From: Selaginella moellendorffii
Taxonomy: Eukaryota > Plantae > Lycopodiophyta
DNA length: 64,000 nucleotides
Direction of reading: 5' to 3'
NCBI RefSeq assembly: GCF_000143415.4
Contig: NW_003314335.1
Location: forward strand, 117,982-181,981
The position numbers were made by a program, and so were the translations under genes. Below the pieces are notes generated by a model that was given only the letters and a program-made list of their open reading frames with translations, was not told where the DNA came from and searched no databases. Positions 2,385-34,030 of this stretch are shown here, in pieces. The stretch's first letter is position 1. The number at the start of each line of letters is the position of its first letter.

Positions 2385-4100
2385 TTACAATCTCAATACC
2401 TGTTCGTGCGAGAAGCCGGCTGTTCTTGGCCTCCACACTTTCCACAGCCGATCGTGGCTGGCAGTGACGAGAAAATCCGCCGTGGGAGACCAGGCAACGT
2501 CGAAAACATGATCGCTATGAGCGCTGGAATCACTCGGTTAGTTCAAAAGCTCAAAGCTCGGACTCCTTACCTCAGGATGTGAAGACACTCGAAAGTGGCA
2601 GTGTCATACAGCCGGACTGTCGTATCACCAGAGGTGGTCGCGAGCAATCTGCCGTATGGAGAGAACGCGACGCGCTTCACCTCCCCGGAATGCTCTTGCA
2701 ACACCGCTAGCGGAGAACACATTCTCAAGTCCCATATCCTGCACGACTTGTCATCACTTCCAGTGGCTAGCAGCCATCCCGAGTCATCGATGTCTACACC
2801 AATGACGTCCTCAACATGGCCACGAATTGTCTGCACGTCTTTGCTGCACCTGGCGTCCCAGAGCTTGGCTGTGTAATCGAAGGAAGAGGTTGCAATCAAA
2901 TGGCCGCATGGCTGGAAGCAAACTCCATAGACCGTGTTGCGATGACCCTGTGAGCAAGAGAAGGACGAAGAATGAACAAAATTCGACGAGCTTTGTGTGG
3001 AAATTTACCTTCAAAGCGGTCACCGCAACTCCTCTTTCGGCATCCCATATGATACAAGTGGTATCGTCAGAAGCTGTAGCTAGTAAGTTAGTTCCTCGTT
3101 TGAATGACAATCCATTCACCTGCGAGTGCGAACATGAGCAAATACAAAGGGAAAGATGGAAGAAAGAGAAAAGACTGACCTCGTCTTTGTGACCTTCGAG
3201 AACGCTAATGCATTCTCCACTGTCTAAGCTCCAAAGCCGGCATGTCTGATCCGAGCTCACCGTTGCTACGAGATCTCTTCTTACGGGAGAAAACTTCACG
3301 GCATACAGGCCCAGCATATGTCCAGAAAGCACACCGACCTCCTTCTCCAAGTCCGTATCATAGATCCGGCAAAAGTGATCCCAAGAGGCCGTCGCTACTA
3401 AATTCCCCGAGGGATTCACGGCAATCCCATGCACCGGAGCCGAGTGCACGAGAAACTTTCGAGCAACGTCCCAGCTCGTCGCGGTTAGATTCTCTTCGAC
3501 TTTTCGTGGAGGCCGTGCTGCTCCAAACCCAGTCTCCACAGCTTCGCTCTCAAATCCCCACGATGGTGCCTGAGACAACCTTAGCCTCATCCCAAGAGCG
3601 TGCTTCAAAACTTTGTTCTCGTCATGCAAGCTATGGACTTGCCCCTGGAGTTTTTGATTCACTCTCTCGAGCTCGGCTACCTGGACTTTGAGCTTGGCTC
3701 GCTCCACCATCACTTGCTGCCATCGCTCGGCCACCTTGCCCAGCACGAATTTCACCAAAACATCGTCTTCCTCGCCTACATTCTTCTCACCACCGTGATT
3801 TTCCTTGTTCCTGTCACTGCCCCTTTGCCTGCTGCTACTGCCACCGCTGCTACTACCACACTCCTCGCTCTTCTCCAAGCTAGTCTCCAGCGACGATACC
3901 TGGACGCCGGCGTCTTGATCGTAGAGTGAGATCAGGGCCGAGATTTCTCCGACGAAAGCCCGGCACACCGGGCACGCCGCCTCGTTCCGGAACCAGATCG
4001 TGGCGCATGGCTGGCAGAAGACATGGCCACATTGCGTGATCTGAGCTCGCTGCACGGCCGAGAAGGCGCTCTCGAAGCAAATCTTGCAGGTGAGCCCCAT
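2385..4100 (-). CDS. RING finger + coiled coil + WD40 repeat protein (multi-exon)
   Basis: C3HC4 RING CKIC...CGHVFCQPC...CPVC, a heptad region, then about 7 WD40 repeats (ATASWDHFCRIYD, GHMLG, ATASDDTTCIIWD, SSFDYTAKLWD, TASHDRLWKVW) across short introns. ATG 4100, TAA 2385. Confidence 0.85.
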
Positions 4101-4264
4101 GATCGATCGCGCGAGGCCTACATTGGATCCCACCTACCGATCGATCGATCGATCAATCGCTCCCGCTTTGGCCCTAAGACATGCGAGGGAGCTAAGAGAG
4201 AGGATTCACGCGCTAATAGTAGCGCCCTCCCCCGACGCAAGGGCGAAGAACCCTAGAGACAGGT

Positions 4265-4338
4265 GGCCTACTAGCTCAGTAGGTTAGAGCGTGGTGTTGA
4301 TAACGCCAAGGTCGCAAGTTCGAGACTTGCGTGGGCCA
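4265..4338 (+). tRNA. trnI-GAU: tRNA-Ile, anticodon GAU
   Basis: Full cloverleaf: acceptor GGCCTAC/GTGGGCC, D arm GCTC/GAGC, anticodon stem TGGTG/CGCCA with loop TT-GAT-AA (4299-4301), T arm GCAAG-TTCGAGA-CTTGC. TTTT terminator at 4350-4353. Confidence 0.93.
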
Positions 4339-4596
4339 CACAACACTCCTTTTCATCCATTTTCTTCCTCCTCCGCCGCCAAGATCTTTGCTCATACTCT
4401 CAAAAAATGGTTTTTTGGCAAGGATTGGGGCAAATGTGGCAGATCTAGATCTCCAGAAACATTTTTAGGCAAGGAATGTGGCCGATCTAGAGCTTGGGCA
4501 GACGCAATTCATGAGAGAATATGGCTGATCGGCCCCAATTTCACGGAATCTGGCTAGAATTTCCTCGGCAATGGCCGCGTCTTGACGACTACATCA

Positions 4597-6225
4597 ATGG
4601 CGAGGCAACTGGAGAAGGCTGTGATCGAGCAGGACGTCCCCCACCTCGCGGAGCTCATCAATTCGTGCGCCAAGCTCAAAGATCTGTCGCGCGGCAAGCT
4701 CCTCCACGACCAAATCGATCGCTCGCCGCTGGGAAGATCGACCTATCTCCGGAATCTCCTCATCGACATGTACGGCAAATGCGGCCGCGTCGATGACGCA
4801 CGGAACGTCTTTGACGCCACCCAAAACCCTAACCATTTCTCGTGGAATATCCTCATCGCAGCATATGCCCAGAATGGGCATACGCAAGAGGCAAGGAACG
4901 GCCTCGATTTAATGCCGCAGTGGACGTTAGTCGCCTGGAACTCGTTGATCACGGCATATGCCCAGAGCAAACTCCTCTACGAGGCCAAGCATCTCTTCGC
5001 GAATATGCCCGGCACGGACGTTATCTCGTGGACGGCTATGATCACAGCATATGCCCGGAATGGGCATCCACACGAGGCAAAGGCCACTTTCGATCGATCG
5101 CCGGTTCGAAACGTTCTAACGTGGAACGCGATGATCGCGAGCTACGCGGAGGGCCACTGTTTGGCGGAATCTAAAATGATGTTCGATAAGATGCCTCATT
5201 GGCATGTGGTATCTTGGACTGGGATGCTCTCGGCATATGCCTCGAATAGGCAAAAGTCTCAAGCGATTGACCTCTTTAACTCGATGCCGCGGCGAGAGGT
5301 CGTGTCGTGGAACGCTATGATCCAGGCATACGTTGACTCATCGGAGCTTGACTCTGCGCGACTAACTCTAAATAAAATGCCCTACTGGGATGTGGTATCG
5401 TGCACGGCTATGATCGCCGCATATGCCCAGAATAGGGATTTTGATGAGGCTAAGAGATTATTTGCGATCATTCCACAAAAGGACCAAGTGTGCTGGAACA
5501 CGATGATCACTGCCCACATTAGCAGCGGTGACCTAATCGCCGCGGAGATGGCGCTGGAATCTATGCCCACGCCCAACGCCGTGTCGTGGAATATCCTTCT
5601 CTCGGCCTACGCGGAGAAGGGCGAGCTGGCGAAGGCGAGGCGCCTGTTTGACAGCCTCTCCAAGAAGAACCTGGTGACGTGGAACGCCATGGTCCAGGCG
5701 TATTGCCAGGCGGGTAATATCTGCGAGGCAAAGGCGCTGTTTGATCAAATGAAGCAACGAGATTCCGTGACGTGGTCGTCCATGATCCAAGCGTATGCCC
5801 AAAATGGCCACTACCGCTTGGCATTCGAGCTCTTTGGGACGCTCAATCTCGAGGGATTGAAGCCCAGCGAGATCACATTCGTGGAGATCCTCAGCGGGTG
5901 CTGCCAATCGGGGAAGATTGGCGACGCAGCATCGTTCTTCCGGTCGATGATCGAGGATTTTGAGCTGGTGCCGCTGGTGGAGCACTACCGCTGCGTGGTG
6001 GATCTTCTAGGGCGATTGAAGCGCTTCGAGGAGGCCGAGGAGCTGATCGAGAGCATGCCCTTCCCGGCCGATTCGATCGCGTGGATGGCGCTGCTAGCGT
6101 CGTGTAGGGTTCACGGCGATGTGGAGCGAGCCAAGATCGTCGCCAAGAAGATCGGCGATCTAAACCCCGAGAGGGCCGCCACGTATGTGATGCTCGCGAA
6201 TATCTACAAGAAACCCGAGCTTTGA
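4597..6225 (+). CDS. PLS-class pentatricopeptide repeat protein with E domain (no DYW)
   Basis: Intronless ORF. About ten consecutive 31-aa PPR motifs (xxxVSWNAMIxAYAQ), then P2-L2-S2 (EHYRCVVDLLGR), E1 (PADSIAWMALL) and the start of E2 (ATYVMLANIY). Confidence 0.93.
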   Translation: MARQLEKAVIEQDVPHLAELINSCAKLKDLSRGKLLHDQIDRSPLGRSTYLRNLLIDMYGKCGRVDDARNVFDATQNPNHFSWNILIAAYAQNGHTQEARNGLDLMPQWTLVAWNSLITAYAQSKLLYEAKHLFANMPGTDVISWTAMITAYARNGHPHEAKATFDRSPVRNVLTWNAMIASYAEGHCLAESKMMFDKMPHWHVVSWTGMLSAYASNRQKSQAIDLFNSMPRREVVSWNAMIQAYVDSSELDSARLTLNKMPYWDVVSCTAMIAAYAQNRDFDEAKRLFAIIPQKDQVCWNTMITAHISSGDLIAAEMALESMPTPNAVSWNILLSAYAEKGELAKARRLFDSLSKKNLVTWNAMVQAYCQAGNICEAKALFDQMKQRDSVTWSSMIQAYAQNGHYRLAFELFGTLNLEGLKPSEITFVEILSGCCQSGKIGDAASFFRSMIEDFELVPLVEHYRCVVDLLGRLKRFEEAEELIESMPFPADSIAWMALLASCRVHGDVERAKIVAKKIGDLNPERAATYVMLANIYKKPEL

Positions 6226-9589: not shown

Positions 9590-9895
9590 AGCTGAGAAAG
9601 AAAAAGAAAAAAGAGATTTTACCCCGGGTGTGTGATTATGGGCGAAAGAGAGGCGTCCTTTTTTTTTTACGTAAGTAGTTTTGATTCATTTTAAAGTGGG
9701 TTTAGCTACAAACTTCCACGTACTATACACTTAGGAAAGATATATTTTTCCATAGGAAATGAGAAAGAAAAATTAAAAAGAGATTTTACCCCGGGTGTGT
9801 GATTCCGGGCAAAAGAGAGGCGTCCTTATTTTTACGTAAGTAGTTTTGATTCATTTAAGCTACGAAAAGTACGTACTAAACACTTAGGAAAAATA
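9590..9895. repeat. Two-copy imperfect direct repeat (about 130-150 bp) downstream of Hsp110
   Basis: aaaagagattttaccccgggtgtgtgatt...aaagagaggcgtcctt...tacgtaagtagttttgattcattt...cacttaggaaa is repeated at about 9608 and about 9776. Confidence 0.85.
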
Positions 9896-16575: not shown

Positions 16576-16781
16576 AGAAAGTAGCAGGGGATCAAAGAGA
16601 CCATTCCTATAATCTTGGAGCTTCAATCCAAGCACAGGATTATGCGATATGGTGCTTGGAAATGGGAACAAATTTGAATTAAGGTTATATTATTCTATTA
16701 AGCGGTTAAGTTATGCAAGTTCGAATCCTGTTATCCATATCTTTGAAACTTGATTAGATGCTAAGTTAAACTAATGCTAAT

Positions 16782-16862
16782 GTGGATGTGCCAGAGTGGT
16801 TATCGGGCATGACTAGAAATCATGTGGGCTTGCCCGCGCAGGTTCGAATCCTGCCGTCCACG
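16782..16862 (+). tRNA. trnS-AGA: tRNA-Ser(AGA)
   Basis: GTGGATG...CGTCCAC acceptor, anticodon AGA at 16815-16817, long variable arm, GTTCGAATCC, immediate TTTT terminator. Confidence 0.92.
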
Positions 16863-21864: not shown

Positions 21865-24056
21865 ATGGTGGTGGTGAGTTGGGAGGCTGTAGTGGATAGG
21901 CTGCATATTTTCTCTCCGACAGAGAAGCGCCAGATCAAGGAAAATGTCGAAGCAGCTGGGGATGTGGAACAGGCTGAAGACGCTGTCGCAATCACCGGTG
22001 GTCATGCAGAGAAGCTGATGGATTTCTTCAAGTGGTACGTCTATCCACTAGATGACCCAGGTGTTCCAAAGTTCCTGGAGGATTTAGACAAACGGTTCAT
22101 CCAGTACAACGGCAGGAGAACCGCAGTCAAGACGCAGGAGTTGCAAATGGTGTCCAGGCAGCAGGTGCAATTGGCTGCCCAATACAAGAATTGGGATCTG
22201 TCGAATCTCTTGATCTGGCTCCCCCCTATGGACAACAAGTCTAGCCTCGGCCGGGTAAACTCAACAAGGGTGGAGAGGAAGCAGCTGGAACGCAGCGAGG
22301 AATTCGACCGCATGGGCCTTCCTGATCTTCCTTTCTCTCGTCTCTTTGCCGAGAACAAGGAAACTTTTGTAAGAGATTTGAGAGCGGTGGGGGTATTGGT
22401 GCAGCGAGTAACCAACGAGATGGATGACGACCTGAAGGAGGACTCATACGCGCGACAGGTCCGCTTTCTCCTCAGCTACGCCAAGGCAATTGCACGCGCA
22501 CGGAATGTGCCCATACAAATCACAGTGGTGGCAGGCGAAACAAGATTGTCGCTTAGTCAGTATTACAGAATCCCGGATGGATTTTTCCGTATAGGTGCCA
22601 GATCGAACGCCGTGGAGCAGAAGACTGAGAACTCACGATCTCTTTTGGAACTAGAGGAGGCTCGAGGGCAGCTGGTAGTCGCAGGCAATTTCCTGTTTTT
22701 GGAGCGAAGCAAGTATCACGGAGTTGAGGGAAGGAGCGAGATGTACGGTTTCGTTGGGACTGGACTCAGGGTGCAGTGTGTGTATCAAGCACACGAGTAC
22801 GACAGGAGACCTCAGACAGTAGACGGACCTTTGCTTCCGTTGGCGGACGGGGACTACTCTCCTGGCAATCTTTTTACCATCAACATGGACATGCCCGCCG
22901 TCCAGTGGATAGGGGCAACCCTTGACAGGCAAATATTGGAAGAAGGGGGACTCAGAGCTGTTTCCAGGGATCCTTTTTCTCGTCACAATCTCGAGCTGAA
23001 AGCCAGCAGCGGCTACTATGTAGGCGAACAGTTTTTAGAAATTCCAGTGCAAAGCCGAATGGATGACAAGATGACGGTTGCCGTGATAGGAACTGCACTA
23101 CACACAGAGACTAGTCTGGTTTTCAGAGTTTCATGGCGAGGCCAGGACTGGTGGCTGAAGGTTGGGCCAGACGTGCAACGCCGGGCGGAGGCGCTCCAGA
23201 CATTAGAGCAGGAGTGGATGTGGGAGAGATGGTTTCAGACGGAGCGAGATATGTTTTTCAGAGCTCAACTCGGAGAGACAGGTTCTTTTCCGGTGATGGT
23301 GGAGGGTCAAGGCTTGCAAAACAGGCCAGCGATGCTTGTCAAGGATGTGGGGGAGCCGCTGGAAAGACTTCTGTTCTCCTCCTCCATGACTCCCCCACAA
23401 GTTTACGAGATGAGCAAGCAGCTTTATGAAGTGCTGCAATGCTGCGCTTCAAAGGGTGTTTACCACGGGGATGTTTCTCTACAGAACATCTGCTGGAGGG
23501 ATGGCACCTACAGCTTGATAGACTGGGGCCTCGCATACGGCTCGGCATTTCTAACGTTCGTTGAAGCAGTTGACAGTGCATGGCCTTCTCTTCATGTCAA
23601 GACTGCAATCCCTGGGATTCCGAACTGGGAGTTGTCTTCCAACTGGTACTTCCTGGGTATGAGGCCGCAGGATGGCGTCAGCGACTTGGAGAGCCTGCTC
23701 TTTTGCTGCCTGAAAATTCTCAACGAGAATTCGCTGCCGTGGACCAAGGCTTCGGAGAGCGGCAGCGAGGACGAGGTTCTCGAACTCAGGCGAAAGTACC
23801 TGCCGGTCTTGGTGGCAAAAAACAGTGGTCACCTCTTCGAGCCTTTGCTTGCGCACCTCAAACGGTATGGATGGTTTTCTTTTGTCTCTGCTCTCACTAA
23901 TTACGTGCTGGCAGGGCTGGGCATCCCTTGATCACAGATAACACACTCAACTTGTCTCTTCACACTAAAGTGGATGATCTTCAGTGCACATCTTCATCCT
24001 CGGCTTCTCTTCTGCCGAAAGTACCAGATTCAATGGTACCTGTTTGGAGTTTATAG
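21865..24056 (+). CDS. CR-effector-like protein: REase-fold domain + FunK1/CR-type protein kinase
   Basis: 688-aa ORF (stop 23931 unspliced; a possible 50-nt intron near 23865 would extend it to 24056). IPDGFF...VEQK nuclease-like motif; kinase WLKV, HGDVSLQNI, LIDWGLA, DLESLLF. Confidence 0.72.
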
Positions 24057-26699
24057 GATGACAGCGGTACTTTTCTCATTCAGCAGCATACTAGTTTGTT
24101 GTTCTTGTAGCAAGATAAGCATGGTGACAATAGTAGAGAAAAAGTGAATTTCACAATGAAATTGGAATGAAACACTTGGAGATTTCACAATATATGGTTT
24201 TTGAAAAATTGCCACGTTTCATTCCACATAGTACAAATGACCGATCCACTGCACAAATTTCACTCGTGGCAATTTTCAATCCACTCCACGTGGCACTTGA
24301 TTGATTCATACATTAGATTTTTTTTCTTGTTAAACGGGGCTTTTTATTTTCCAGCAAAAAACTGGGTGTAGTTTTTAGGTTATGTTTGGGTACATTAATG
24401 TTCTTAAATCTTGGTTATATAGTTCTTCTTTACATTTCGACGAGTTTGGTAATATTTTAGGATTATAAATTTGTTTATATCCCAAATAAAAACAAGTTAT
24501 AAGAATAATTACATTTAGCCAGACAAAAAACAATATAAGAAGAATTACTAAAACTAAATTTTATTAATTAGATGTTCCATGTAAAGTAATAAAAGCATTA
24601 TTCTTAGAAATTTTTATTTAAATTTTTCTTGGTTGAGTATTAAGTTTTTTAAAATCTTAGTATTCTAAATATATTTATATTCTCAAGTAATACTGCATAT
24701 AATATCTTTATCAATAATATTTACTTAGTAATTCTTCTTTTTCACCTTGGGAATATATTATTGTTCTAAATAGTCTATACTATTTTATATATATAGTCAA
24801 AGGCTAGAGTGAACATAAATTGATATATATCAAAATGTATAAAATTATTGATTTTTATACTCATCCAACATTTGCTGGGCAATATTAGGAGGTTGCAGCT
24901 GAGGAGGGAAAACTCTTTTTTTACCACAGCATCTTTCCTTTGCCCTTGCAGCTAGGTAAATTTTCTTTATCACAACTCCTCCTCAACACCAAAGTTTTGT
25001 TTGCTCCAGGTTTCTCTTCTTTATTGAAGCTCCTTAGCCTCAAAGTTTGTGGAAGAAGAGAGCACTGGGTGCTAGAGATGGATGCCCAGGAGCTTGTATT
25101 GCTCGAGTATAGGGTTTGTGGGTGGGCATGTTGAGTGATCGTCCTTTTTAGTGTTGGATATACAAAGCTTGGCTCATGCATATGCTGTGTGTAGGGTCTT
25201 ATCCATCCTGTTTTTTGCAAAAAGTTCTCCCTTCTGTCTTTAGGGCTGGATTAGCAATGGAGTGCTATGGCTGGTGCTTATAGAACTAGAGAGCTTGCTT
25301 GGATCTCTCATACACTGCACAAGAATTTTCTACTCATTTTTGTAGGATACCCCAACTAGGAATTTTCATTCTTGTAGAGGAAATTCAATTTTCAGGTTTT
25401 GCGCTGGGTTTCAACATGTGAGAAGCTGGCTCTCACGATGGTAGCCATACAGCCATGGCTGTGCAAGTGCAATTGAAGGTGTTCATGTTACTAGCAATGG
25501 ATGACTTTGAACTCTTGATTGTGTGTAAACACCTCTGGGTTTGATGTTGTCCCAGCCATAGTCACTACAGGAACTAGAGCTGTGCTTCAAGGTGTCACCA
25601 TATGGATCAATGACCCCACTAATTTCCAAATGTTAAAGGAGAAGCCACTTAAGGACATTGAGAATCACAATTATATGTCTCTGCTAGCTAAATTTGGGTG
25701 TTTTATATGTTGTTTGAAGTATGTGTCTTTTATATGATACCAATAGCAAAACATTCTGAGCATGGTGAGGTGCTAGAATTCTAACTGCTAGAGTCTTCAC
25801 TACAAAAGGTTGAGCATCAATACCACTCAACACATTACATGTGACATGTTATTTTGTCACCCCAGGCAATTTACAACCTCCCAAGTGGGAAAAAGAAAAT
25901 TAAAAATGAAACAAAGAAAAGGGAAGAAAAAGAGAATAAAGGAAAAATAGAAAAGAAAGATAAAAAAGAGTGGTCTAATAGATGAATGATGGATGACAGT
26001 GATGGCTGATTTGAATACGATGATAGTGGAGGGGAGCTAGTAGCCTGAAAATGTGAAGTGGTTGGTAGTATGTGTGCTTGTTGTGGGAGAAGAAAAAGCT
26101 TGCAATCTTTGCAGGCATTTATTGGGATCATTATATTCTATTGCTATAGGGTGTAGGATTGGGTAAAATGTCCACCCAAAGTAATTTTTAGTCTTCTATG
26201 CGCATTAGGTCCAATAGGCTCTCAAAAATTAACTGCTAAGTGTCTTAGATTTGCCTATACTTTCTAAATCAAGATAGTCATGTCAATTTTTGCTACTTCT
26301 TATTGCATCTACTACATATGGATATGATGAATAAAGTGATGTAATAGGATCCCCAAGATCATATGTGCATAGTAAGAAAAGTGAAGAAATATGGATTGGG
26401 CAACTGTAGTGACTAATAAATAGTGGTGAGTAGAGGAATGAATAAATTATAACTATGAGTGATGGAAAGTGATATTGATAATAAATGGAGTGAAATCATG
26501 TGAAGAAAACTTAAGAATTGTGAGAGGTAAACTATGAAATGGATGAGCTCCCAAATGAGAGGAGTTGATGGAGCCTTAAGGTGAAGGTCAAGGCTCATGC
26601 TTGCTCCACTTATAAGATCATGTCTTGGAAGAGAAAAGAAAAAGAAAGAAAAACCAAGGGATAGAAAGAATGACAAAAAAGAAGTCACTACAAAAATGT

Positions 26700-29200
26700 G
26701 TCAATAAAACTTTAAACTGCTGTAGGTAATATGGAAGGAAGTGTCTCCAAAGTAGTGAATTCAGTTTGAAGTGCTCATAAGAATTTGGTGGTCAAGTGAA
26801 GTGTTAGTAGACACAAAACATGCCATGAATGCTATGGTTGATGCTAGCATCTAACATCCCAAAGCTAGAGAGGCTTCTGAAAAAAGTTGGCTTGTGGTGG
26901 AGAAAAAGTGCTACTATTGCCACTTTTGATTGGTAGATAATTTACAAGCTTCTAGCTTGTAAGCTTTTGGCCTGCATGCATCTTGTCCACCTGCTATATC
27001 ATAGTGTTGTGGATCATGTTGGAGGGCTAAAGAAGGTGTAGAGAAAAAGTCATGGTTGGAACTAATTTGTTGCAAATGTGTTCTCATCATTGCTCACAAG
27101 GTCATATGGTAAAGTACATATGCCTTGAAGACTTCTATGTAAAGGCATAATTAGTACAATATCACAAACTTTTTGGTGGATATTAACTCCAAGGGAGGAA
27201 GAGAAATCATGCTCCATGGCTACAAACTACCTCAACAAAGTGAATGTGGGTAATGCTGGGTCAATCTCGAGTGAAGTGGCCTCATCTGATGGTCAAGGTT
27301 GCATCTCTACCTTGTCTGGATGGACCTTGTGCTTCACAAGCTCAAGATTCACTACTTCTACTTGAAAACTCAAGGATATCACCTCTGTTGATAGAGTTGT
27401 GTGGAATCTTTGAGCTGGGAAAAACTAGATTTGGCACCTCTAGTTGTATGAGAAAGTGTTGTAGAGTGTCCTCTTGTGTCCTTGCAAGGATCTGTCTCAA
27501 GAAAGTTGCTCTCTAAAGGCACCACGAAAATTGTGTTCTCTTCCAAGTCGGGCATTTTTGGAATCTTGAGGATCTTTTACCTCCTTGAGCCCAAATGAGC
27601 ACAGTGATGTAAAGTGGGTGGCAGAGAAGTTAAGGGACAAAGTTGTCTAATGCATATGCAAAAAATCAATCATGTTGCATCACAAAGATTGAGACTCCAT
27701 CATCATATTAGCAATTGACAAAGAAGCAATATATTGTTGTGGAGAGGAGTTTAGTGGTGCTATCTTGGGATGCCAAGGCTTGTCCTTTAGAATTGAGAAC
27801 GATAACCTAGCTATCACTTCTCCCAATTTGTAGTTGCCCATGCTTGAAGTTGAAGATGCAAGGCTTTGCATCTAACCATGGCCATCCCAAGATGACAGAC
27901 TTCTCCTATGAGGAGGCTCCTAAAGCAATGTAGTCAATGACAAGGAAGTTGGCTGTGGACTCATGATTGTGGATGAGAATGTAGACACTTTGGCAAATTC
28001 TTGTGGGTGCTATAGTGTGATCCACAAAAGTTTTCAACATGACTTTGGAATACTCCTAGATCTGGAGGCTTGTTTGTTGAGCAAGAGTGGAGGAGAGAAT
28101 GTTTGTGGTTGAGCTAAAGTTAGTAAGAGCCTTCATATCAATGCCCATAATAGTTTTTGAAACTATTCCATTAAGAGCTCATATTGAGATCTCAAGCTGT
28201 TGAAGCAAAACTAAGAAAGAGCGCCAAGTGTTGTCGTGATTGGAGTTGTCATGACCTAGTCAATAGGATTTCTTGAGTGACCACTTGACATCAAAGGAGA
28301 CCCTTTTGGATGTGTGCTAGTGAAATTTGGCACACATGTAGAAGCTAGAACCTAAGATATCGGTAAGGACATTGGCACTGCTGCAAATGCCTTCGGGAAG
28401 GGCAACTTGGAAACAGTGAGAATTGGAGAGGAAATGATTGTTGGAGCTGGTGCTAGTGTGGTGTCCAACTCATCTACTATTGTTTATGCCTTCCACTAAG
28501 CTCAGGTAGCCAACTTTATTGTCAGCTCTTCTACTATGTGCACTAAGAATTTAATTTGTCAGTGGTGCTTTAGTAGCATGCTGATGGAGTCATACCAATG
28601 AGGTTGTCACTTGAGGGTGGTCTTGTACAACTATCTTCAATGCTTAGATCTCCTTTATGAGTTTTCTTTGCTGCTCCTGCTATTGCTGAAGGATCACCTT
28701 GTATTCGATGAACTTGGCCAAGGTAGACTTGACTATAGCAGGCATCTTCTCAGTGACTTGCTAAAGTGCCATGAGTTGAGTAGAGGCATAGGGACGAGCT
28801 GCTAGGGGTCCTTGGATGAGCTTCTCAATGAATGAGACACCAAGTTTGCAAAACATCTCTGACTCAAGCATTGTGACATCACTAGTGGTGGCACTTAGTT
28901 ACTTTCCTCTAAAGCCTGGGCTTGAGGCCTTGTCTAAAGGTGGACATTCTGATGGACTCCTCTTGTGTTGCTCTCTTATCAAGGTAAGTCTTTCAAAATG
29001 CCTTGAATCACATTGTATAATCAAAGACGGATTCATATATTGCAAATCCCTGAATAAGGTATCTACTGGATCCAATGAATCCTCCTTGTTCGAGATGAAA
29101 TGGTGGAAATCAAGCTCTCACTTCAAACTTGAAAACTTGCCTTTTCAGAGTGGAGACTGGTGCCTTCTAAATTGATCCTCCAGGTGATCTTGAATGTGTT
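26700..29200 (-). mobile_element. Highly degraded LTR retrotransposon relic, probably Ty3/gypsy gag region
   Basis: Minus-strand TFRQGLKPRL*RKV at 28901-28941 resembles the retrotransposon gag F..GL.P motif. Many stops; boundaries approximate. Confidence 0.4.
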
Positions 29201-30879
29201 GTCACCGACATAAAATGTTCAAATCACTACAATTGCCCAAACATGATAAATGTTATGAAGTGATGCGCCCAATTTAGCAAGTTGAATTGTCCCCAAATGC
29301 CCTAAGCAAAGCTCATAACTAAAATAAATAATCATGAATTTCACAAACTCCAAAATCAAACTCCAAGAGTTGTAAAAATGTTGAGATATCTCCAAAAGAA
29401 ACAAATGTTGTGTTTTTCTTTTGAAAACTCTTACTATGGTGGATAGAATTGTTTGAAAAGTGGCTCAATGTCAACCTAAGAAGCTAAGTCATCCTCTTCA
29501 TGCAAAAGATTTGCAAAAATCAAGTGTAAAATGGGAGAAAATATCTCAAAAACAATGATCATACTCAAATAAGGATCTGCACTAAATTGAATGATTTAAC
29601 ATAGAAATTCGAAATCACAAAGGAATTTACAATCCTAATATAAAAAATTGTGAAAAAGGTATTAACTTTATGTGCTAGAGAAGCATGCAACTTCGTTTGT
29701 CATACAATACTAGAAAAAATGACTTGGATTTAGCTTAAGACTCCATGAAAGTATTGAAGTTATGACTCAAAAGAAATAGCAAAGTATGGGGTGTATGATG
29801 CAACAAACAACAGTGAAAATGAATTTTATACGCTCGAGAATTAATGGTCAAATATTGCCATGGCATGGGGAAAGAACGAATTAAAGTGTGATTAGCAAGA
29901 AACAATGAAAATGCACAAATCTGGATGATGGGTAACTCTGTCCATGTCTTAAGACCACTCAAAAGTAAGATTTTACAAGGATGCATAAAATGGAGAGAGT
30001 TCTCACCATGCAAAGCTTTCACACTCGTTAGAAAGAAGAGCCTAAGTTTTACACACCCAAAGAAAATGTTCCAAAGCTAACTTTATCTCCCCTAGGAGAT
30101 TAGATGGTTGATGCTCCCAATCTAAGTAGGGGTGGCACTACCCATTTAGAATACTTTATGTGGTTCATCAAAACCTCACTTTAGCCATATAGTTGGAACA
30201 TCTTAGTGGCAAAAGGTGGTGGGAGTATTTATAAAGTTTGTATTGAGTCACAATGTTTCAAAATTTTGTCCCTAAGTCCCAAACTATGGAAAAAAAGAGA
30301 GGAGTGGTCCTCTTGCTTGGTGACTAAAGGTATGGTTATGTGGTGAAAAAATCTTAAAAGTTAATGGGGCTTAGTGGTTAGGCTTTTAGACTCTATACTA
30401 GTGGTGGTGATAGCAAGTATTATCATAGATGAAGAGGGACTTGGTGGGGACTAAAGAAGGGATATTAAAAGATGATATTTTTCATATTTTAAGGCATCCT
30501 AAGGATGCTAAATGACCACTTATGGATGGATGGCCCAATCTCAAAGAGATGGGACCATGTTGCAAATGGTCTAGGGCTACTAATGAGACAAGGGGAATGA
30601 ATATAATTTAATAAACTAAGATGTTAATGGTACCTTTGGGTGTCGGAAGTGAGATTAGATATATGGAGCACTTGGACTAAATGCAAAGCTAATGTGGTAT
30701 TGAGATTGCATCTAGGGGTAAACAAGTACTCCAGGGTGGATGAGGACCTACAAAGGTTATAAGTGAGACTCTTCCAAGAAGTCAAAGGCATAATTAAGTG
30801 ATTAAAGTAGAATGGAAAATTTAATCATTTACACTGCTCACTATCCTTACTATATATTTAGAACCCCTCCCACAAACAT

Positions 30880-33800
30880 AGTAAGCTATCATCTAGCAAT
30901 ATTGAGAGACTAGTCTCAATACGGAGGTTTTTTACAAGCTAATACAAGATAAAGCAAAAGAGAACTAACAAACCGTACTAAGTATGCTTGACTAAATAGA
31001 TATATAGGAATTCATTCCTTATGTGCATCCAATGAAATATAGATATTAAGTTTAGTTTAGTAACACTTGAATAAGAGAGATTGAAAAGGGAACAAGCAAT
31101 ATTGATCTCTTGCCATCATAGCAATAAAAGAAGAATATATTAAAAGACTCTCTAACATATAACTTTTGATATTCACAATCATATTTACAACACCCTTAGG
31201 CCATGAAAGTGCTTTGAGGTTGAGCTCATGTGGCCATTTTAGGCACTTTTGCGGCCCAAAAGGCTAATGTTATTTAACTAACTTTGGCTCTCTAGACTGC
31301 AAAAGTGTATAAAAATCTTTATATTCATCTAATCAAGTATAGATGCTAAATCTAGTTTAGTAACACTAACAAAATACTTGTGAATGTATCACCCAATGGA
31401 AATAACATTCTAATCTAACAGAATGAATCTTAGTAACAATCAACAGAACAAAATGAATATCATAAATGCCAATAAACACTTGTTAATGCCAACTATCACA
31501 CTAGGCAATTAGAATAGATCATAATCAACAATATTAAAGAACTAGAGTTTGAAGTAATGACATCCTATTGATATTATAAACCCAAAAGATCAATTCAAAA
31601 TAAATTATAAAAAATATATGGTAATGCATAAAACCAAAACCCACCAAGATAACAATTAACCATCACAAAAGATTATTAATCATCCCATAATTAAATATGC
31701 ATAATCACTATTTGAAGAAGAATCTACCAATCCAAAAAATGACAAACTAACCATCACTAACAGTAATCAAACAAGATGTTTAATAAGGATGATCAACTAT
31801 CCTAAATAACATCAATGATTGCCAAATGCAAACACTAAGGTTTTGGCTCATTGGTTCTAATGTTCAAGTTTTCCCTAACAACTCTTAACAAATGAAATAT
31901 TGACTATGATAACTTAAATAACCAAAAACTCAAAAAAGTCTTATAACTAAATCACATATAACAACGATCACACATCTTGTATCAACCAACATCAATGCTA
32001 AAGAAGAATTCATGGTAAAATCACAACATCCTCCTATAAGCTTAAGTTCATAATGCAAAAGTTAATAAAAAGTATATTTGCATCAATCCAAAAGTTAAAC
32101 ATAACAAAATTATGCTCAACAAATGATCTCTAAATAATTCATCAATTCATAACAAAACATAACTTACTTTATAACATATTGCTCATGATCACATGGATAT
32201 GATATAAGTATCATAATGATTGATCATCAATTGAGCATTACCATGAGTAACACCTATACCACTATTATAAAGATTTATATGAATATTAAATGTCAACTTG
32301 ATTTGAAAAAATACAACATAAATACCACTCCTTTGATAGAAGTTACAACACCACTAAATTCGTTCACAATATAGACAAGCTTATATCACTCTCTTAATGA
32401 CCAAATTCAAAATTAATCCAACACCAAATTACTCAAGGAATAATAATAAGGTTTCCCAAGAGCCTTATAACTTAAATTTTTTATTAACAAGCCTAAGCAC
32501 AATGATTTAGTACTTTATTGTTATCCATCCCATATCTCACCACTTGTAAGTCCATCATACCCAACATGCATCAATAGAGACCACTCGATTGTATGATTTG
32601 AATAAGAGTAATAGATTACACTTTGTTGCAAATCATCTCTTGAAGACAAAAAAATGATTTACATGTTTGATCTTTTGTTTTTGATGACTTTCCTTTTGGT
32701 CTCAACTTGATTGAATCTCAACCTTGCATTTACACTCCTTTCAGTTTAATTTAAGAAAAATATATAAAAGAGTATGGCATTGACTACTTGAATCAATAGA
32801 TTAATCCCTACAATTTATTTAATACATTTATAATCATGTCTAGGAAGGATTCACTGGTGTTATGTTAAATAGGTATAGATCAGCCTATTTTCCACTCATA
32901 GCAAGCCAAGGGAAAACTTAATTTTACCATGTATATAGTAACAACTCATAGTAACCATTAATTAATAAGCTAATATTAATTGTGTCAACTCAAAGTATAA
33001 CTTTAAGTTGCTAATGCATCTAACTCATGAGCCCAAGCGCAAACTTGTGCAAAAGACATATCTCAAATTCATTGTAAACTCTTGAGTTTGGACATAGCTT
33101 TCTTAAGAGCCCTGCTCTCTTGACACCCTTAGAGTCGAGCCCAAATGGAGTAAATTGGACTTGATATATAGCAATTAATATATGGTGCAATTTCTCTAAG
33201 CCAACCAATAGAGTTATGTAATTCATCTAAGCCAACCAATAAAGTTGGACCTGAAATCCACTTTGATACCAAATGTAAACTCTTAAGTTTAAACTTCCCA
33301 GGAGGTCATCTAACCCAATATTACTCAAATCCAAGGACATTTAACCTTAAATATCTCAAGACATTTAACTAATTGAAAAAGAAGGTGCGCTTTTATTCAT
33401 ATGCCCTTTCCCTATATATTTAAACCCTTATGGATTGTCTCTCGAGTCATTTCCTTTAGTTGCTTACATCCATCTTATGAGCCCAAGAAAAAGCTCACAA
33501 TATAATACAAAAAGGTGACAAAATCCATTTCTAAAAAACACATGCGAAGCTATAACAACCAAATGTGTACTCATTTGGATCATCATTTTTATCTTTACAT
33601 ATGTAATAGTACTAATTGCCCTCACTAAAATATTATCCTTTGATATCAAATGTAGCACCTTCACCCTTTATCTTATAATGTTTTACCATAGGACAATAAC
33701 AAAGTGGAATCTTAACTGTTGGATATATGGGTCAAAAGCAGTAGAGTAAAACTTGAGCATTAAGGCGTTGGGCCATTGAATGAAAAGATAAAGCCAAACT

Positions 33801-33930
33801 CTCGAACATGGAGGTAAGGAGTGAAGGGACAAAAGCACATTATTTTGGTATACTAATGGCTTAACATGATAATATAGGTACTCCATGTAGAACAAGGACA
33901 AGCACGCAAGTGAAAGTTAAATTATGCCTC
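30880..33930 (-). mobile_element. Old degenerate non-coding LTR element related to the 37.3-42.9 kb insert
   Basis: Shared blocks such as atcacatggatatgatataagtatca (32188 vs 42293) and tctcaatacg...ctaagtatgctt (30915 vs 38128). PBS relic tggtatcaaag on the minus strand at 33261-33271 next to a TG terminus at 33274. Confidence 0.65.
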
Positions 33931-34030
33931 NNNNNNNNNNNNNNNNNNNNNNNNNNNNNNNNNNNNNNNNNNNNNNNNNNNNNNNNNNNNNNNNNNNNNN
34001 NNNNNNNNNNNNNNNNNNNNNNNNNNNNNN
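33931..34030. other. Assembly gap (100 N)
   Basis: Run of n characters. Confidence 1.

What the first reader, a model, noticed from the sequence alone, without database searches (positions are those of the whole stretch)
4265..4338. Cytosolic-type tRNA-Ile carrying a GAU anticodon
Seen: an intact cloverleaf with anticodon GAT and a Pol III T-run. Known: eukaryotic nuclei normally read AUU/AUC with A34(I34) tRNA-Ile(AAU) and avoid G34 here, whereas GAU is the bacterial/organellar form. The body is not plastid-like; it resembles plant cytosolic tRNA-Ile(AAU) as I recall it (GGCCTATTAGCTCAG...GGTTCGAGACCTGCATGGGCCA). The differences look compensatory in three stems (acceptor pair 7, anticodon stem, T stem), which argues for selection rather than a sequencing error or decay. 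Inference: an anticodon-switched nuclear tRNA that may serve organelles. Selaginella organelles are known to have lost most or all tRNA genes and depend on import.
Basis: partly seen in the sequence, partly recalled or inferred. Interest (0 to 1): 0.8.

Follow-up and report, generated by a model that had tools for sequence, protein, structure and literature searches.

The report
Nuclear isoleucine tRNA with GAU anticodon
The spikemoss Selaginella moellendorffii has an intact nuclear gene for an isoleucine tRNA of the ordinary plant cytosolic type whose first anticodon letter is G instead of A, which plants normally avoid; whether it is expressed, or serves the tRNA-poor organelles, remains untested.

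Summary
The genome is Selaginella moellendorffii. The second haplotype of the assembly and independent public contigs carry the identical gene, so it is not a sequencing error.

The body is eukaryotic. It is 67/74 identical to plant cytosolic tRNA-Ile(AAU). The same core with G34 was found in none of 185,579 prokaryotic genomes.

G34 is rare in this kind of body. Of 124 eukaryote-type tRNA-Ile genes sampled from metagenomes, 106 have A34, 18 have T34 and none has G34. Only this gene also has U32 in place of C32. Two stem pairs (7:66 and 52:62) differ from the nearest plant form in a compensated way. That is suggestive only (1.3-14.5% under random substitution).

Its upstream flank is unusually GC-rich. 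No orthologue, paralogue or expression data could be obtained, and the organelle-import idea has no direct support.

Functional nuclear tRNA-Ile(GAU) genes are known in humans. Anticodon-shifted tRNA-Ile(CAU) genes are known in S. kraussiana, and this scan noted one elsewhere in this genome. The GAU gene itself had not been noted on other DNA.

Verdict: a real gene, moderately interesting, function open.

The parts
4265..4338 (+). tRNA-Ile(GAU) gene, 74 nt, no intron, CCA not encoded
   Evidence: ARAGORN; Rfam RF00005 62.5 bits; identical copy in the second haplotype
4299..4301 (+). Anticodon G34-A35-T36
   Evidence: None of 124 eukaryote-type tRNA-Ile genes from metagenomes has G34.
4297..4297 (+). 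T at position 32. With A38 (4303) it could form a Watson-Crick 32-38 pair.
   Evidence: All 124 comparators have C32/A38. The link between G34 and a pairable 32-38 comes from PMC7293025 and is suggestive only.
4272..4283 (+). Internal Pol III A box (tRNA positions 8-19)
   Evidence: Read from the sequence. The D arm is identical to plant-type Ile-AAU genes except position 17.
4317..4327 (+). Internal Pol III B box (tRNA positions 52-62), with G53, T54, T55, C56, A58 and C61 intact
4350..4353 (+). TTTT, the likely Pol III terminator, 12 nt after the tRNA 3' end; a second TTTT lies at 4360-4363
   Evidence: Median distance in 117 comparator genes is 5-6 nt, with values of 1-42 nt among the dozen plant-type genes printed.
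4215..4264 (+). Upstream 50 nt: 40% A+T, no CAA within -10..-1, no clear TATA-like element
   Evidence: Lowest A+T of 117 eukaryote-type tRNA-Ile genes (minimum 44%; plant-type mean 71%). The tRNA-Ser gene in this window has 74%.
2800..4100 (-). Divergent neighbour: RING + WD40 gene (XP_002986541.2). Start codon at 4100, introns at 3118-3177 and 2947-3007, continuing below 2800.
   Evidence: Pfam; 100% identity to the S. moellendorffii protein; splice joints in three runs
4597..6225 (+). Downstream neighbour: PLS-class PPR gene with E motif, ORF starting 259 nt after the tRNA
   Evidence: Pfam PPR 296 bits, E motif; translation

Best explanation
Shown: this is a genuine nuclear gene of Selaginella moellendorffii from the eukaryotic (plant cytosolic) tRNA-Ile(AAU) lineage. 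Its wobble base has changed from A34 to G34, and C32 has changed to U32. It lies in the 460-bp gap between two divergent protein genes.

Inferred from how two assemblies run through it: it is single-copy per haplotype.

[quoted passage not shown] The precursor is trimmed and CCA is added. Isoleucyl-tRNA synthetase charges it, because eukaryotic IleRS reads the 6-carbonyl that G34 and inosine-34 share. The tRNA then reads AUC by a G-C pair and AUU by G-U wobble. It does not read AUA and does not need A-to-I deamination by ADAT. On this reading it is a minor extra isoleucine isoacceptor. The anticodon shift is harmless because it does not change the amino acid. Whether it acts in the cytosol, the organelles or both is open.
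For: The gene is intact with a full-length tRNA match, and its score is close to plant-type Ile-AAU genes (62.5 against 64.8-70.1 bits). The body is 67/74 identical to a plant-type AAU gene, and the nearest 30 relatives are all of that type. Reference contig L027 carries plant-specific snoRNAs, so it is a plant contig. The G34 core pattern was absent from 185,579 prokaryotic genomes. The gene is identical in both haplotypes while the flanks differ by about 1.5%, and in independent contigs. All stem differences from the nearest plant form are compensated (7:66 T-A to C-G; 52:62 G-C to A-T). Seven random substitutions keep all 21 pairs in only 1.3% of trials under a uniform model. Contigs of runs X14 and X7 pass through the tRNA without a break. 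That implies no other locus shares a 30-mer with it, so it is a distinct single-copy isodecoder and not a point mutant of an existing paralogue. Yeast IleRS charges a G34 tRNA-Ile as well as the I34 form (PMC11685878). Human cytosolic tRNA-Ile-GAT is functional in decoding AUC (bioRxiv 10.64898/2026.10.08.757597). U32/A38 occurs only here among 125 genes. G34 tRNAs are reported to favour a pairable 32-38 (PMC7293025).
Against: No expression, CCA-tailing or charging data could be obtained. All runs available were assembled contigs, and the single read-laying run cannot show a mature tRNA. The upstream 50 nt is the most GC-rich of 117 comparators and has no CAA near the start, which argues for weak Pol III initiation; such upstream elements are, however, weaker outside angiosperms (PMC13437025). 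With transitions only, the compensation test gives 14.5%. The real ancestor (the S. moellendorffii AAU genes) is unknown. Identity between the haplotypes is expected by chance about 30% of the time. S. kraussiana is reported with AAU and CAU genes only, so the gene may be lineage-specific and dispensable. The 32-38 rule was established for four-codon boxes, not for isoleucine. Yeast IleRS Arg736 stacks on C32, so U32 might slightly impair charging (PMC11685878).
Confidence: 0.55

Rival explanations
1. Silent or near-silent neutral variant. On this reading a former tRNA-Ile(AAU) gene copy acquired A34G. It is tolerated because it is barely transcribed, or adds nothing, and it is still intact by chance or because it changed recently.
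For: GC-rich upstream flank without CAA or a TATA-like element, the lowest A+T of 117 comparators. Single copy (inference). Not reported in S. kraussiana. Six of the seven differences from the nearest plant form are transitions, and a transitions-only null keeps all pairs in 14.5% of trials. Slightly lower Rfam score than AAU genes.
Against: No stem mismatch and no invariant residue lost, despite at least 7 differences from the nearest plant form and at least about 3-4 from any paralogue. A terminator is present. The internal promoter is intact. Upstream AT/CAA elements are less important outside angiosperms (PMC13437025).
Confidence: 0.27
2. Organelle-dedicated tRNA. The G34 tRNA is made in the nucleus and imported into plastids and/or mitochondria. 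Together with the nuclear lysidine-type tRNA-Ile(CAU), it would recreate the bacterial GAU + k2C-AU decoding pair on eukaryotic scaffolds.
For: S. moellendorffii mitochondria encode no tRNA (bioRxiv 10.1101/2021.12.21.473619). Selaginella plastomes have lost trnI genes (PMC6486807, PMC11573648). In S. kraussiana, import is selective for individual isodecoders that differ in sequence, and nuclear Ile-CAU genes exist. An Ile-CAU gene was noted elsewhere in this genome (s1-337388, not checked here). This gene is a sequence-distinct isodecoder.
Against: No localisation data exist. In S. kraussiana an imported AAU (inosine) isodecoder plus a CAU isodecoder already decode all three Ile codons in plastids, and no GAU gene is mentioned. 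From general knowledge, angiosperm mitochondria import and use cytosolic tRNA-Ile, so G34 is not required. No import signal is known that could be tested in sequence.
Confidence: 0.12
3. The tRNA-shaped element works mainly in its Pol II context. It could be a TFIIIC-bound boundary between the two divergent genes, or a tRNA embedded in the 5' leader of the PPR mRNA and cut out by RNase P/Z.
For: It sits 164 nt from the RING-WD40 start codon and 259 nt from the PPR start codon. One contig of a run guessed to be RNA spans 4060-4824 across the tRNA. In two other runs, contigs stop and restart at the tRNA edges.
Against: The run types are guesses. Contigs cannot show transcript ends, and the tool warns that its human-like filter can make dips over conserved genes. 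Homologous RING-WD40 loci in other plants have no tRNA. Nothing here requires more than chance adjacency in a compact genome.
Confidence: 0.04
4. Artefact or foreign DNA: either a sequencing or assembly error at 4299, or a plastid or bacterial tRNA-Ile(GAU) inserted into the nucleus.
For: GAU is the bacterial and organellar anticodon. Plastid-derived tRNA-Pro genes do exist in Selaginella nuclei (PMC11573648).
Against: The sequence is identical in two haplotype scaffolds and in contigs of independent runs. The body is 90% identical to plant cytosolic Ile-AAU. There were 0 prokaryotic hits to the core pattern, and 120 prokaryotic hits to the 17-nt anticodon arm are not tRNAs. There is no intron and no rRNA-operon context.
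Confidence: 0.02

Closest known systems
Plant nuclear (cytosolic) tRNA-Ile(AAU) genes, read as IAU after ADAT deamination
   Same: Same length and architecture. 67/74 identical to the nearest plant-type gene. Same T5-G68 wobble pair, A73 discriminator, D arm, variable loop and T loop.
   Different: G34 in place of A34, so no inosine and no AUA reading. U32 in place of C32, A17 in place of U17. Pairs 7:66 and 52:62 are exchanged. The upstream flank is GC-rich.
Selaginella kraussiana nuclear tRNA-Ile(CAU) genes (Berrissou et al. 2024, PMC11573648)
   Same: Same genus. Both are nuclear genes derived from the eukaryotic tRNA-Ile(AAU) body by a change at position 34, in a lineage whose organelles lack tRNA-Ile genes.
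   Different: Those carry C34, have a lysidine-like modification signature, read AUA, number 7 genes, and are shown to be expressed, with one isodecoder enriched in plastids. This gene has G34, is a single gene, would read AUC/AUU (already covered by IAU), and has no expression data.
Human cytosolic tRNA-Ile-GAT minor isoacceptor
   Same: A nuclear, cytosolic-type tRNA-Ile with G34 that coexists with a large AAU family. It is functional in AUC decoding (bioRxiv 10.64898/2026.10.08.757597, citing Earnest-Noble et al. 2022).
   Different: It is in mammals and presumably arose independently. Orthology was not tested, and no plant counterpart was found in the literature searched.
Bacterial and plastid trnI-GAU
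   Same: Same anticodon and the same expected codon reading (AUC/AUU).
   Different: The body is unrelated. This core pattern was found in none of 185,579 prokaryotic genomes. There is no rRNA-spacer location and no group II intron. Selaginella plastomes retain at most a vestige of the gene (PMC6486807).

Membership tests
Eukaryotic nuclear (cytosolic-type) tRNA-Ile genes | Canonical cloverleaf with universal residues | tested here: met
   Rfam 62.5 bits, full length. All 21 pairs canonical and 12 invariant residues intact.
Eukaryotic nuclear (cytosolic-type) tRNA-Ile genes | Body sequence of the plant cytosolic tRNA-Ile type | tested here: met
   67/74 identical to the nearest plant-type AAU gene, and the 30 nearest relatives are all of that type. 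Reference contig L027 carries plant snoRNAs.
Eukaryotic nuclear (cytosolic-type) tRNA-Ile genes | Isoleucine identity set: A35, U36, A37, discriminator A73, and an N34 that IleRS accepts | tested here: met
   Read from the sequence. A73 is present in 122 of 124 relatives. G34 is accepted by yeast IleRS (PMC11685878). Charging itself was not tested.
Eukaryotic nuclear (cytosolic-type) tRNA-Ile genes | A34 (inosine) or U34 wobble base | tested here: not met
   This gene has G34. Among 124 relatives, 106 have A34, 18 have T34 and none has G34.
Eukaryotic nuclear (cytosolic-type) tRNA-Ile genes | [quoted passage not shown] | tested here: met
   A box at 4272-4283, B box at 4317-4327, TTTT at 4350-4353
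Eukaryotic nuclear (cytosolic-type) tRNA-Ile genes | AT-rich upstream region with a CAA motif near the start, typical of plant tDNAs | tested here: not met
   40% A+T, the lowest of 117 comparators, and no CAA in -10..-1. The feature is weaker in non-angiosperms (PMC13437025).
Eukaryotic nuclear (cytosolic-type) tRNA-Ile genes | Mature, CCA-tailed, isoleucylated transcript | not testable with these tools
   Only assembled contigs were available.
Bacterial/organellar tRNA-Ile(GAU) | GAU anticodon | tested here: met
Bacterial/organellar tRNA-Ile(GAU) | Prokaryote-type body sequence | tested here: not met
   0 matches to the D-arm-to-variable-loop core with G34 in 185,579 genomes. Matches to the anticodon arm are not tRNAs.
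Bacterial/organellar tRNA-Ile(GAU) | rRNA-operon spacer location, with a group II intron in plastids | tested here: not met
   The gene is intronless and lies between nuclear RING-WD40 and PPR genes.
Selaginella anticodon-shifted nuclear tRNA-Ile (Berrissou 2024) | Derived from the eukaryotic tRNA-Ile(AAU) body by a change at position 34 | tested here: met
Selaginella anticodon-shifted nuclear tRNA-Ile (Berrissou 2024) | CAU anticodon with lysidine-like C34 modification | tested here: not met
   The anticodon is GAU.
Selaginella anticodon-shifted nuclear tRNA-Ile (Berrissou 2024) | Expression, and enrichment of an isodecoder in plastids | not testable with these tools
   Needs tRNA-seq of purified organelles.

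The most novel reading that the evidence does not exclude
Selaginella has rebuilt the bacterial-style isoleucine decoding pair in its nucleus, on eukaryotic tRNA-Ile scaffolds. That pair is a G34 tRNA for AUC/AUU plus a lysidine-type C34 tRNA for AUA. This GAU gene would then be the imported, organelle-serving partner of the known CAU genes, with the accompanying C32-to-U32 change tuning a G34 anticodon loop for accurate decoding.
Probability: 0.12. Interest if true: 0.75.

Novelty: new member of a known kind. Interest (0 to 1): 0.42.

Why it matters
Eukaryotes almost universally read AUU/AUC with an inosine-34 tRNA and lack G34 tRNA-Ile. The few exceptions, such as human tRNA-Ile-GAT, turned out to have codon-specific regulatory effects.

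Selaginella is the model for tRNA import into chloroplasts, and it has already reshaped its isoleucine tRNA set by replacing UAU with lysidine-type CAU. A third, G34 member of that set gives tRNA-seq and organelle-fractionation experiments in S. moellendorffii a concrete, sequence-distinct target. If it is expressed, it would be the first plant case I could find of a cytosolic-type tRNA-Ile(GAU). It would also provide a natural test of whether G34 needs a pairable 32-38 to be tolerated. If it is silent, it is an ordinary anticodon-mutated gene copy.

Tried and rejected
1. Synteny in other plants. The RING-WD40 neighbour was searched and 19 homologous loci were fetched (L001-L017, L139, L140). 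None carries a tRNA. These proteins are only about 45-55% identical and come from unknown plants, so this says little about other Selaginella species.

2. The PPR neighbour as a synteny anchor. Every listed relative is at most 39% identical, so no orthologue was usable.

3. The species' own Ile-AAU and Ile-CAU genes. No tool here searches plant genomes by DNA. The scan's notes gave no sequence, so the true ancestor of this gene is unknown.

4. Expression. All 24 runs found are stored as contigs and their RNA/DNA type is a guess. The one read-laying run shows presence and allelic variants only. The contig gaps at the tRNA edges in X1 and X19 were not interpreted, because the tool drops human-like records and tRNA-Ile is highly conserved.

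5. Haplotype identity as evidence of constraint. Rejected: at about 1.5% divergence a 74-nt stretch is identical by chance roughly 30% of the time, and the SNP-free stretch of 189 nt is not unusual.

6. Prokaryotic scan with the 17-nt anticodon arm. It gave 120 hits, all chance matches outside tRNAs.

7. Supplementary tables of PMC11573648 are not held, so the S. kraussiana gene list could not be checked for GAT.

Full report
OBSERVATION. ARAGORN finds two tRNA genes in the window. One is tRNA-Ile with anticodon gat at 4265-4339(+). Rfam's tRNA model matches 4265-4338(+) over its full length at 62.5 bits (E 3.5e-11), with no non-canonical pair flagged. A script confirmed that all 21 stem pairs are canonical, including T5-G68 and T30-G40 wobbles. 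It also confirmed that U8, A14, G18, G19, A21, U33, G53, T54, T55, C56, A58 and C61 are in place. The anticodon is at 4299-4301, the discriminator is A, and CCA is not encoded. The first TTTT lies at 4350-4353, 12 nt past the 3' end. A free-energy fold does not reproduce the cloverleaf exactly, which is usual for tRNA, but the sequence folds better than shuffles (z = -3.1).

ORGANISM AND SETTING. The divergent neighbour on the minus strand is a RING + WD40 gene. Its first exon is 100% identical to XP_002986541.2 of Selaginella moellendorffii. Its two short introns are confirmed by joints in three public runs. Downstream on the plus strand lies a PLS-class PPR gene with an E motif (4597-6225), followed by an Hsp70/HYOU1-type gene. 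The tRNA therefore sits in a nuclear intergenic gap of about 460 bp, 164 nt from one start codon and 259 nt from the other.

NOT AN ERROR. The second haplotype scaffold of the same assembly (GL377604.1, locus L018) carries the gene at 9762-9836 with the same gat anticodon. In a 620-nt alignment the flanks differ at about ten sites and two indels, while the tRNA is identical. Contigs from public runs X14 (2800-4374) and X7 (4060-4824) cross the tRNA and list no difference inside it. Their flank variants are those of L018, so they represent the same two haplotypes and are not population data. At this divergence, identity over 74 nt is expected by chance about 30% of the time. I draw no inference about constraint from it.

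WHAT BODY IS IT? I scanned JGI metagenome contigs with a 40-nt pattern running from the D stem to the variable loop. Positions 17, 28, 34, 40 and 42 were left free and position 32 was allowed to be C or T. It returned 124 full-length eukaryote-type tRNA-Ile genes (54 distinct sequences), besides the S. moellendorffii locus already held. The 30 nearest are all of one type, with 63-67 of 74 positions identical to this gene. One of their contigs (L027) also carries the plant snoRNAs snoR44/J54, snoZ267 and snoR122, so it is plant nuclear DNA. The same pattern with G34 fixed matched nothing in one genome each of 185,579 bacterial and archaeal species. A looser 17-nt anticodon-arm pattern gave only chance hits outside tRNAs. 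The body is therefore eukaryotic and of the plant cytosolic type, not plastid or bacterial.

HOW UNUSUAL IS G34? In the 124 relatives, positions 32/34/38 are C/A/A in 106 and C/T/A in 18. None has G34 or C34, and none has T32. The literature agrees that eukaryotes lack GAU for isoleucine (PMC8007984). [quoted passage not shown] The rule has a known exception: human cytosolic tRNA-Ile-GAT is expressed, and its depletion lowers translation of AUC-rich genes (bioRxiv 10.64898/2026.10.08.757597, citing Earnest-Noble et al. 2022). I found no paper describing a cytosolic-type tRNA-Ile(GAU) in a plant. PlantRNA 2.0 does cover S. moellendorffii (bioRxiv 10.1101/2021.12.21.473619), so the gene is probably catalogued there without comment.

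DIFFERENCES FROM THE NEAREST PLANT FORM. There are seven:
- Pair 7:66 is C-G in place of T-A.
- Pair 52:62 is A-T in place of G-C.
- Position 17 is A in place of T.
- Position 32 is T in place of C.
- Position 34 is G in place of A.

As a null model I applied seven random substitutions to the nearest plant form. All 21 pairs stay canonical in 1.3% of trials with uniform substitutions, and in 0.17% if the 12 invariant residues must also survive. With transitions only, the figures are 14.5% and 3.0%. Six of the seven observed changes are transitions, so the evidence for purifying selection on the fold is suggestive, not strong. The real ancestor is also unknown.

SINGLE COPY AND DISTINCT (INFERENCE). 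Neighbouring contigs in run X14 overlap by exactly 30 nt at an allelic bubble (4345-4374). That is what a 31-mer graph produces; that Logan assemblies use k = 31 is my own knowledge. Such contigs end wherever another locus shares a 30-mer. The contigs of X14 and X7 run through the tRNA unbroken. So no other locus seems to share any 30-nt stretch with it. This implies that there is no second identical copy. It also implies that every paralogue differs from it in both the 5' and the 3' part, beyond position 34. Extra depth over the tRNA in X14 (50-64 against a baseline of 21) shows that paralogues at least 85% alike do exist. This argues that the gene is an established isodecoder lineage and not a fresh point mutant. 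It depends on assembler behaviour, and whole-genome tRNA scanning should check it.

WOULD IT WORK? [quoted passage not shown] Its Rfam score (62.5) lies just below six plant-type Ile-AAU genes (64.8-70.1). Eukaryotic IleRS recognises the 6-carbonyl shared by G34 and I34 through a conserved arginine. Yeast IleRS charges E. coli tRNA-Ile(GAU) about as well as its own IAU tRNA, and it handles unmodified A34 poorly (PMC11685878). A G34 tRNA-Ile should therefore be charged without needing ADAT. It should read AUC and AUU but not AUA.

The unique U32 is notable. Pernod et al. [quoted passage not shown] U32-A38 fits that pattern and C32-A38 does not. However, the rule was derived for four-codon boxes. 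A C-to-T change is also the commonest mutation. Yeast IleRS stacks an arginine on C32. I count this as a lead only.

REASONS FOR DOUBT. The 50 nt upstream are 40% A+T. That is below all 117 comparator genes (minimum 44%; plant-type mean 71%) and far below the tRNA-Ser(AGA) gene in this window (74%). There is no CAA in -10..-1. Such elements promote Pol III initiation in plants but are markedly weaker outside angiosperms (PMC13437025), so this lowers the odds of strong expression without excluding it. No expression evidence could be obtained. All runs are stored as contigs with guessed type. Contig gaps at the tRNA edges in two runs cannot be interpreted, because the tool silently drops human-like records. 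Homologous RING-WD40 loci from other plants carry no tRNA, but these are distant and not from Selaginella. The PPR neighbour has no usable orthologue.

THE ORGANELLE IDEA. The premise is sound. S. moellendorffii mitochondria encode no tRNA (bioRxiv 10.1101/2021.12.21.473619). Selaginella plastomes keep 8-22 tRNA genes and at most a vestige of trnI-GAU (PMC6486807). S. kraussiana chloroplasts import about 50 nuclear isodecoders selectively (PMC11573648). But that paper reports 19 AAU and 7 CAU isoleucine genes and no UAU, and it does not mention GAU. It concludes that one imported AAU and one imported CAU isodecoder suffice for all three plastid Ile codons. Nothing in the sequence bears on localisation. 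I give the organelle-dedicated reading about 12%.

VERDICT. This is a real, apparently single-copy, anticodon-shifted member of the plant cytosolic tRNA-Ile family. Most likely (about 55%) it is a minor, chargeable AUC/AUU reader. About 27% of the odds go to a silent, neutral variant. The scan had already noted an Ile-CAU gene and plastid-type Pro genes elsewhere in this genome (s1-337388, s1-374781), which match published S. kraussiana cases. The GAU gene had not been noted on other DNA. It is a new member of a known kind: G34 tRNA-Ile genes exist in mammals, and anticodon-shifted Ile genes exist in Selaginella. It is moderately interesting because it gives tRNA-seq work in this model lycophyte a precise target.

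Noticed in passing
window 16782-16862 (+), and 16719-16729: A second tRNA gene, tRNA-Ser(AGA), scores 51.2 bits. It has a 74% A+T upstream flank and TTTT directly after its 3' end. A B-box-like 11-mer (AGTTCGAATCC) lies about 55 nt upstream of it and may be a tRNA fragment.
   Followed up: partly
window 4060-4360: In runs X1 and X19 (type guessed as RNA), contigs stop at 4263 and 4067 and restart at 4350 and 4357, at or near the edges of the tRNA. In run X7 one contig spans the whole gap. This could be a repeat break, RNase P/Z processing of a read-through transcript, or the tool's human-like filter.
   Followed up: no
window 2947-3007 and 3118-3177 (-): Two short introns (61 and 60 nt, GT..AG on the minus strand) of the RING-WD40 gene are confirmed by identical joints in three runs. 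The longer ORF in the mechanical list reads through the first intron in frame.
   Followed up: yes
window 4597-6225 (+): The PLS-class PPR gene with an E motif has no listed relative above 39% identity in the word search, and even S. moellendorffii paralogues are at most 38% identical. In the other haplotype its gene model is 616 residues long and has no Pfam hit on record.
   Followed up: partly
window 4139-4158: A (GATC)n microsatellite lies between the RING-WD40 start codon and the tRNA, and is identical in both haplotypes.
   Followed up: no
window 24000-34000: A block of low G+C (30-39%, against about 50% elsewhere) interrupts the gene-dense sequence. It is probably repeat or transposon sequence.
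   Followed up: no
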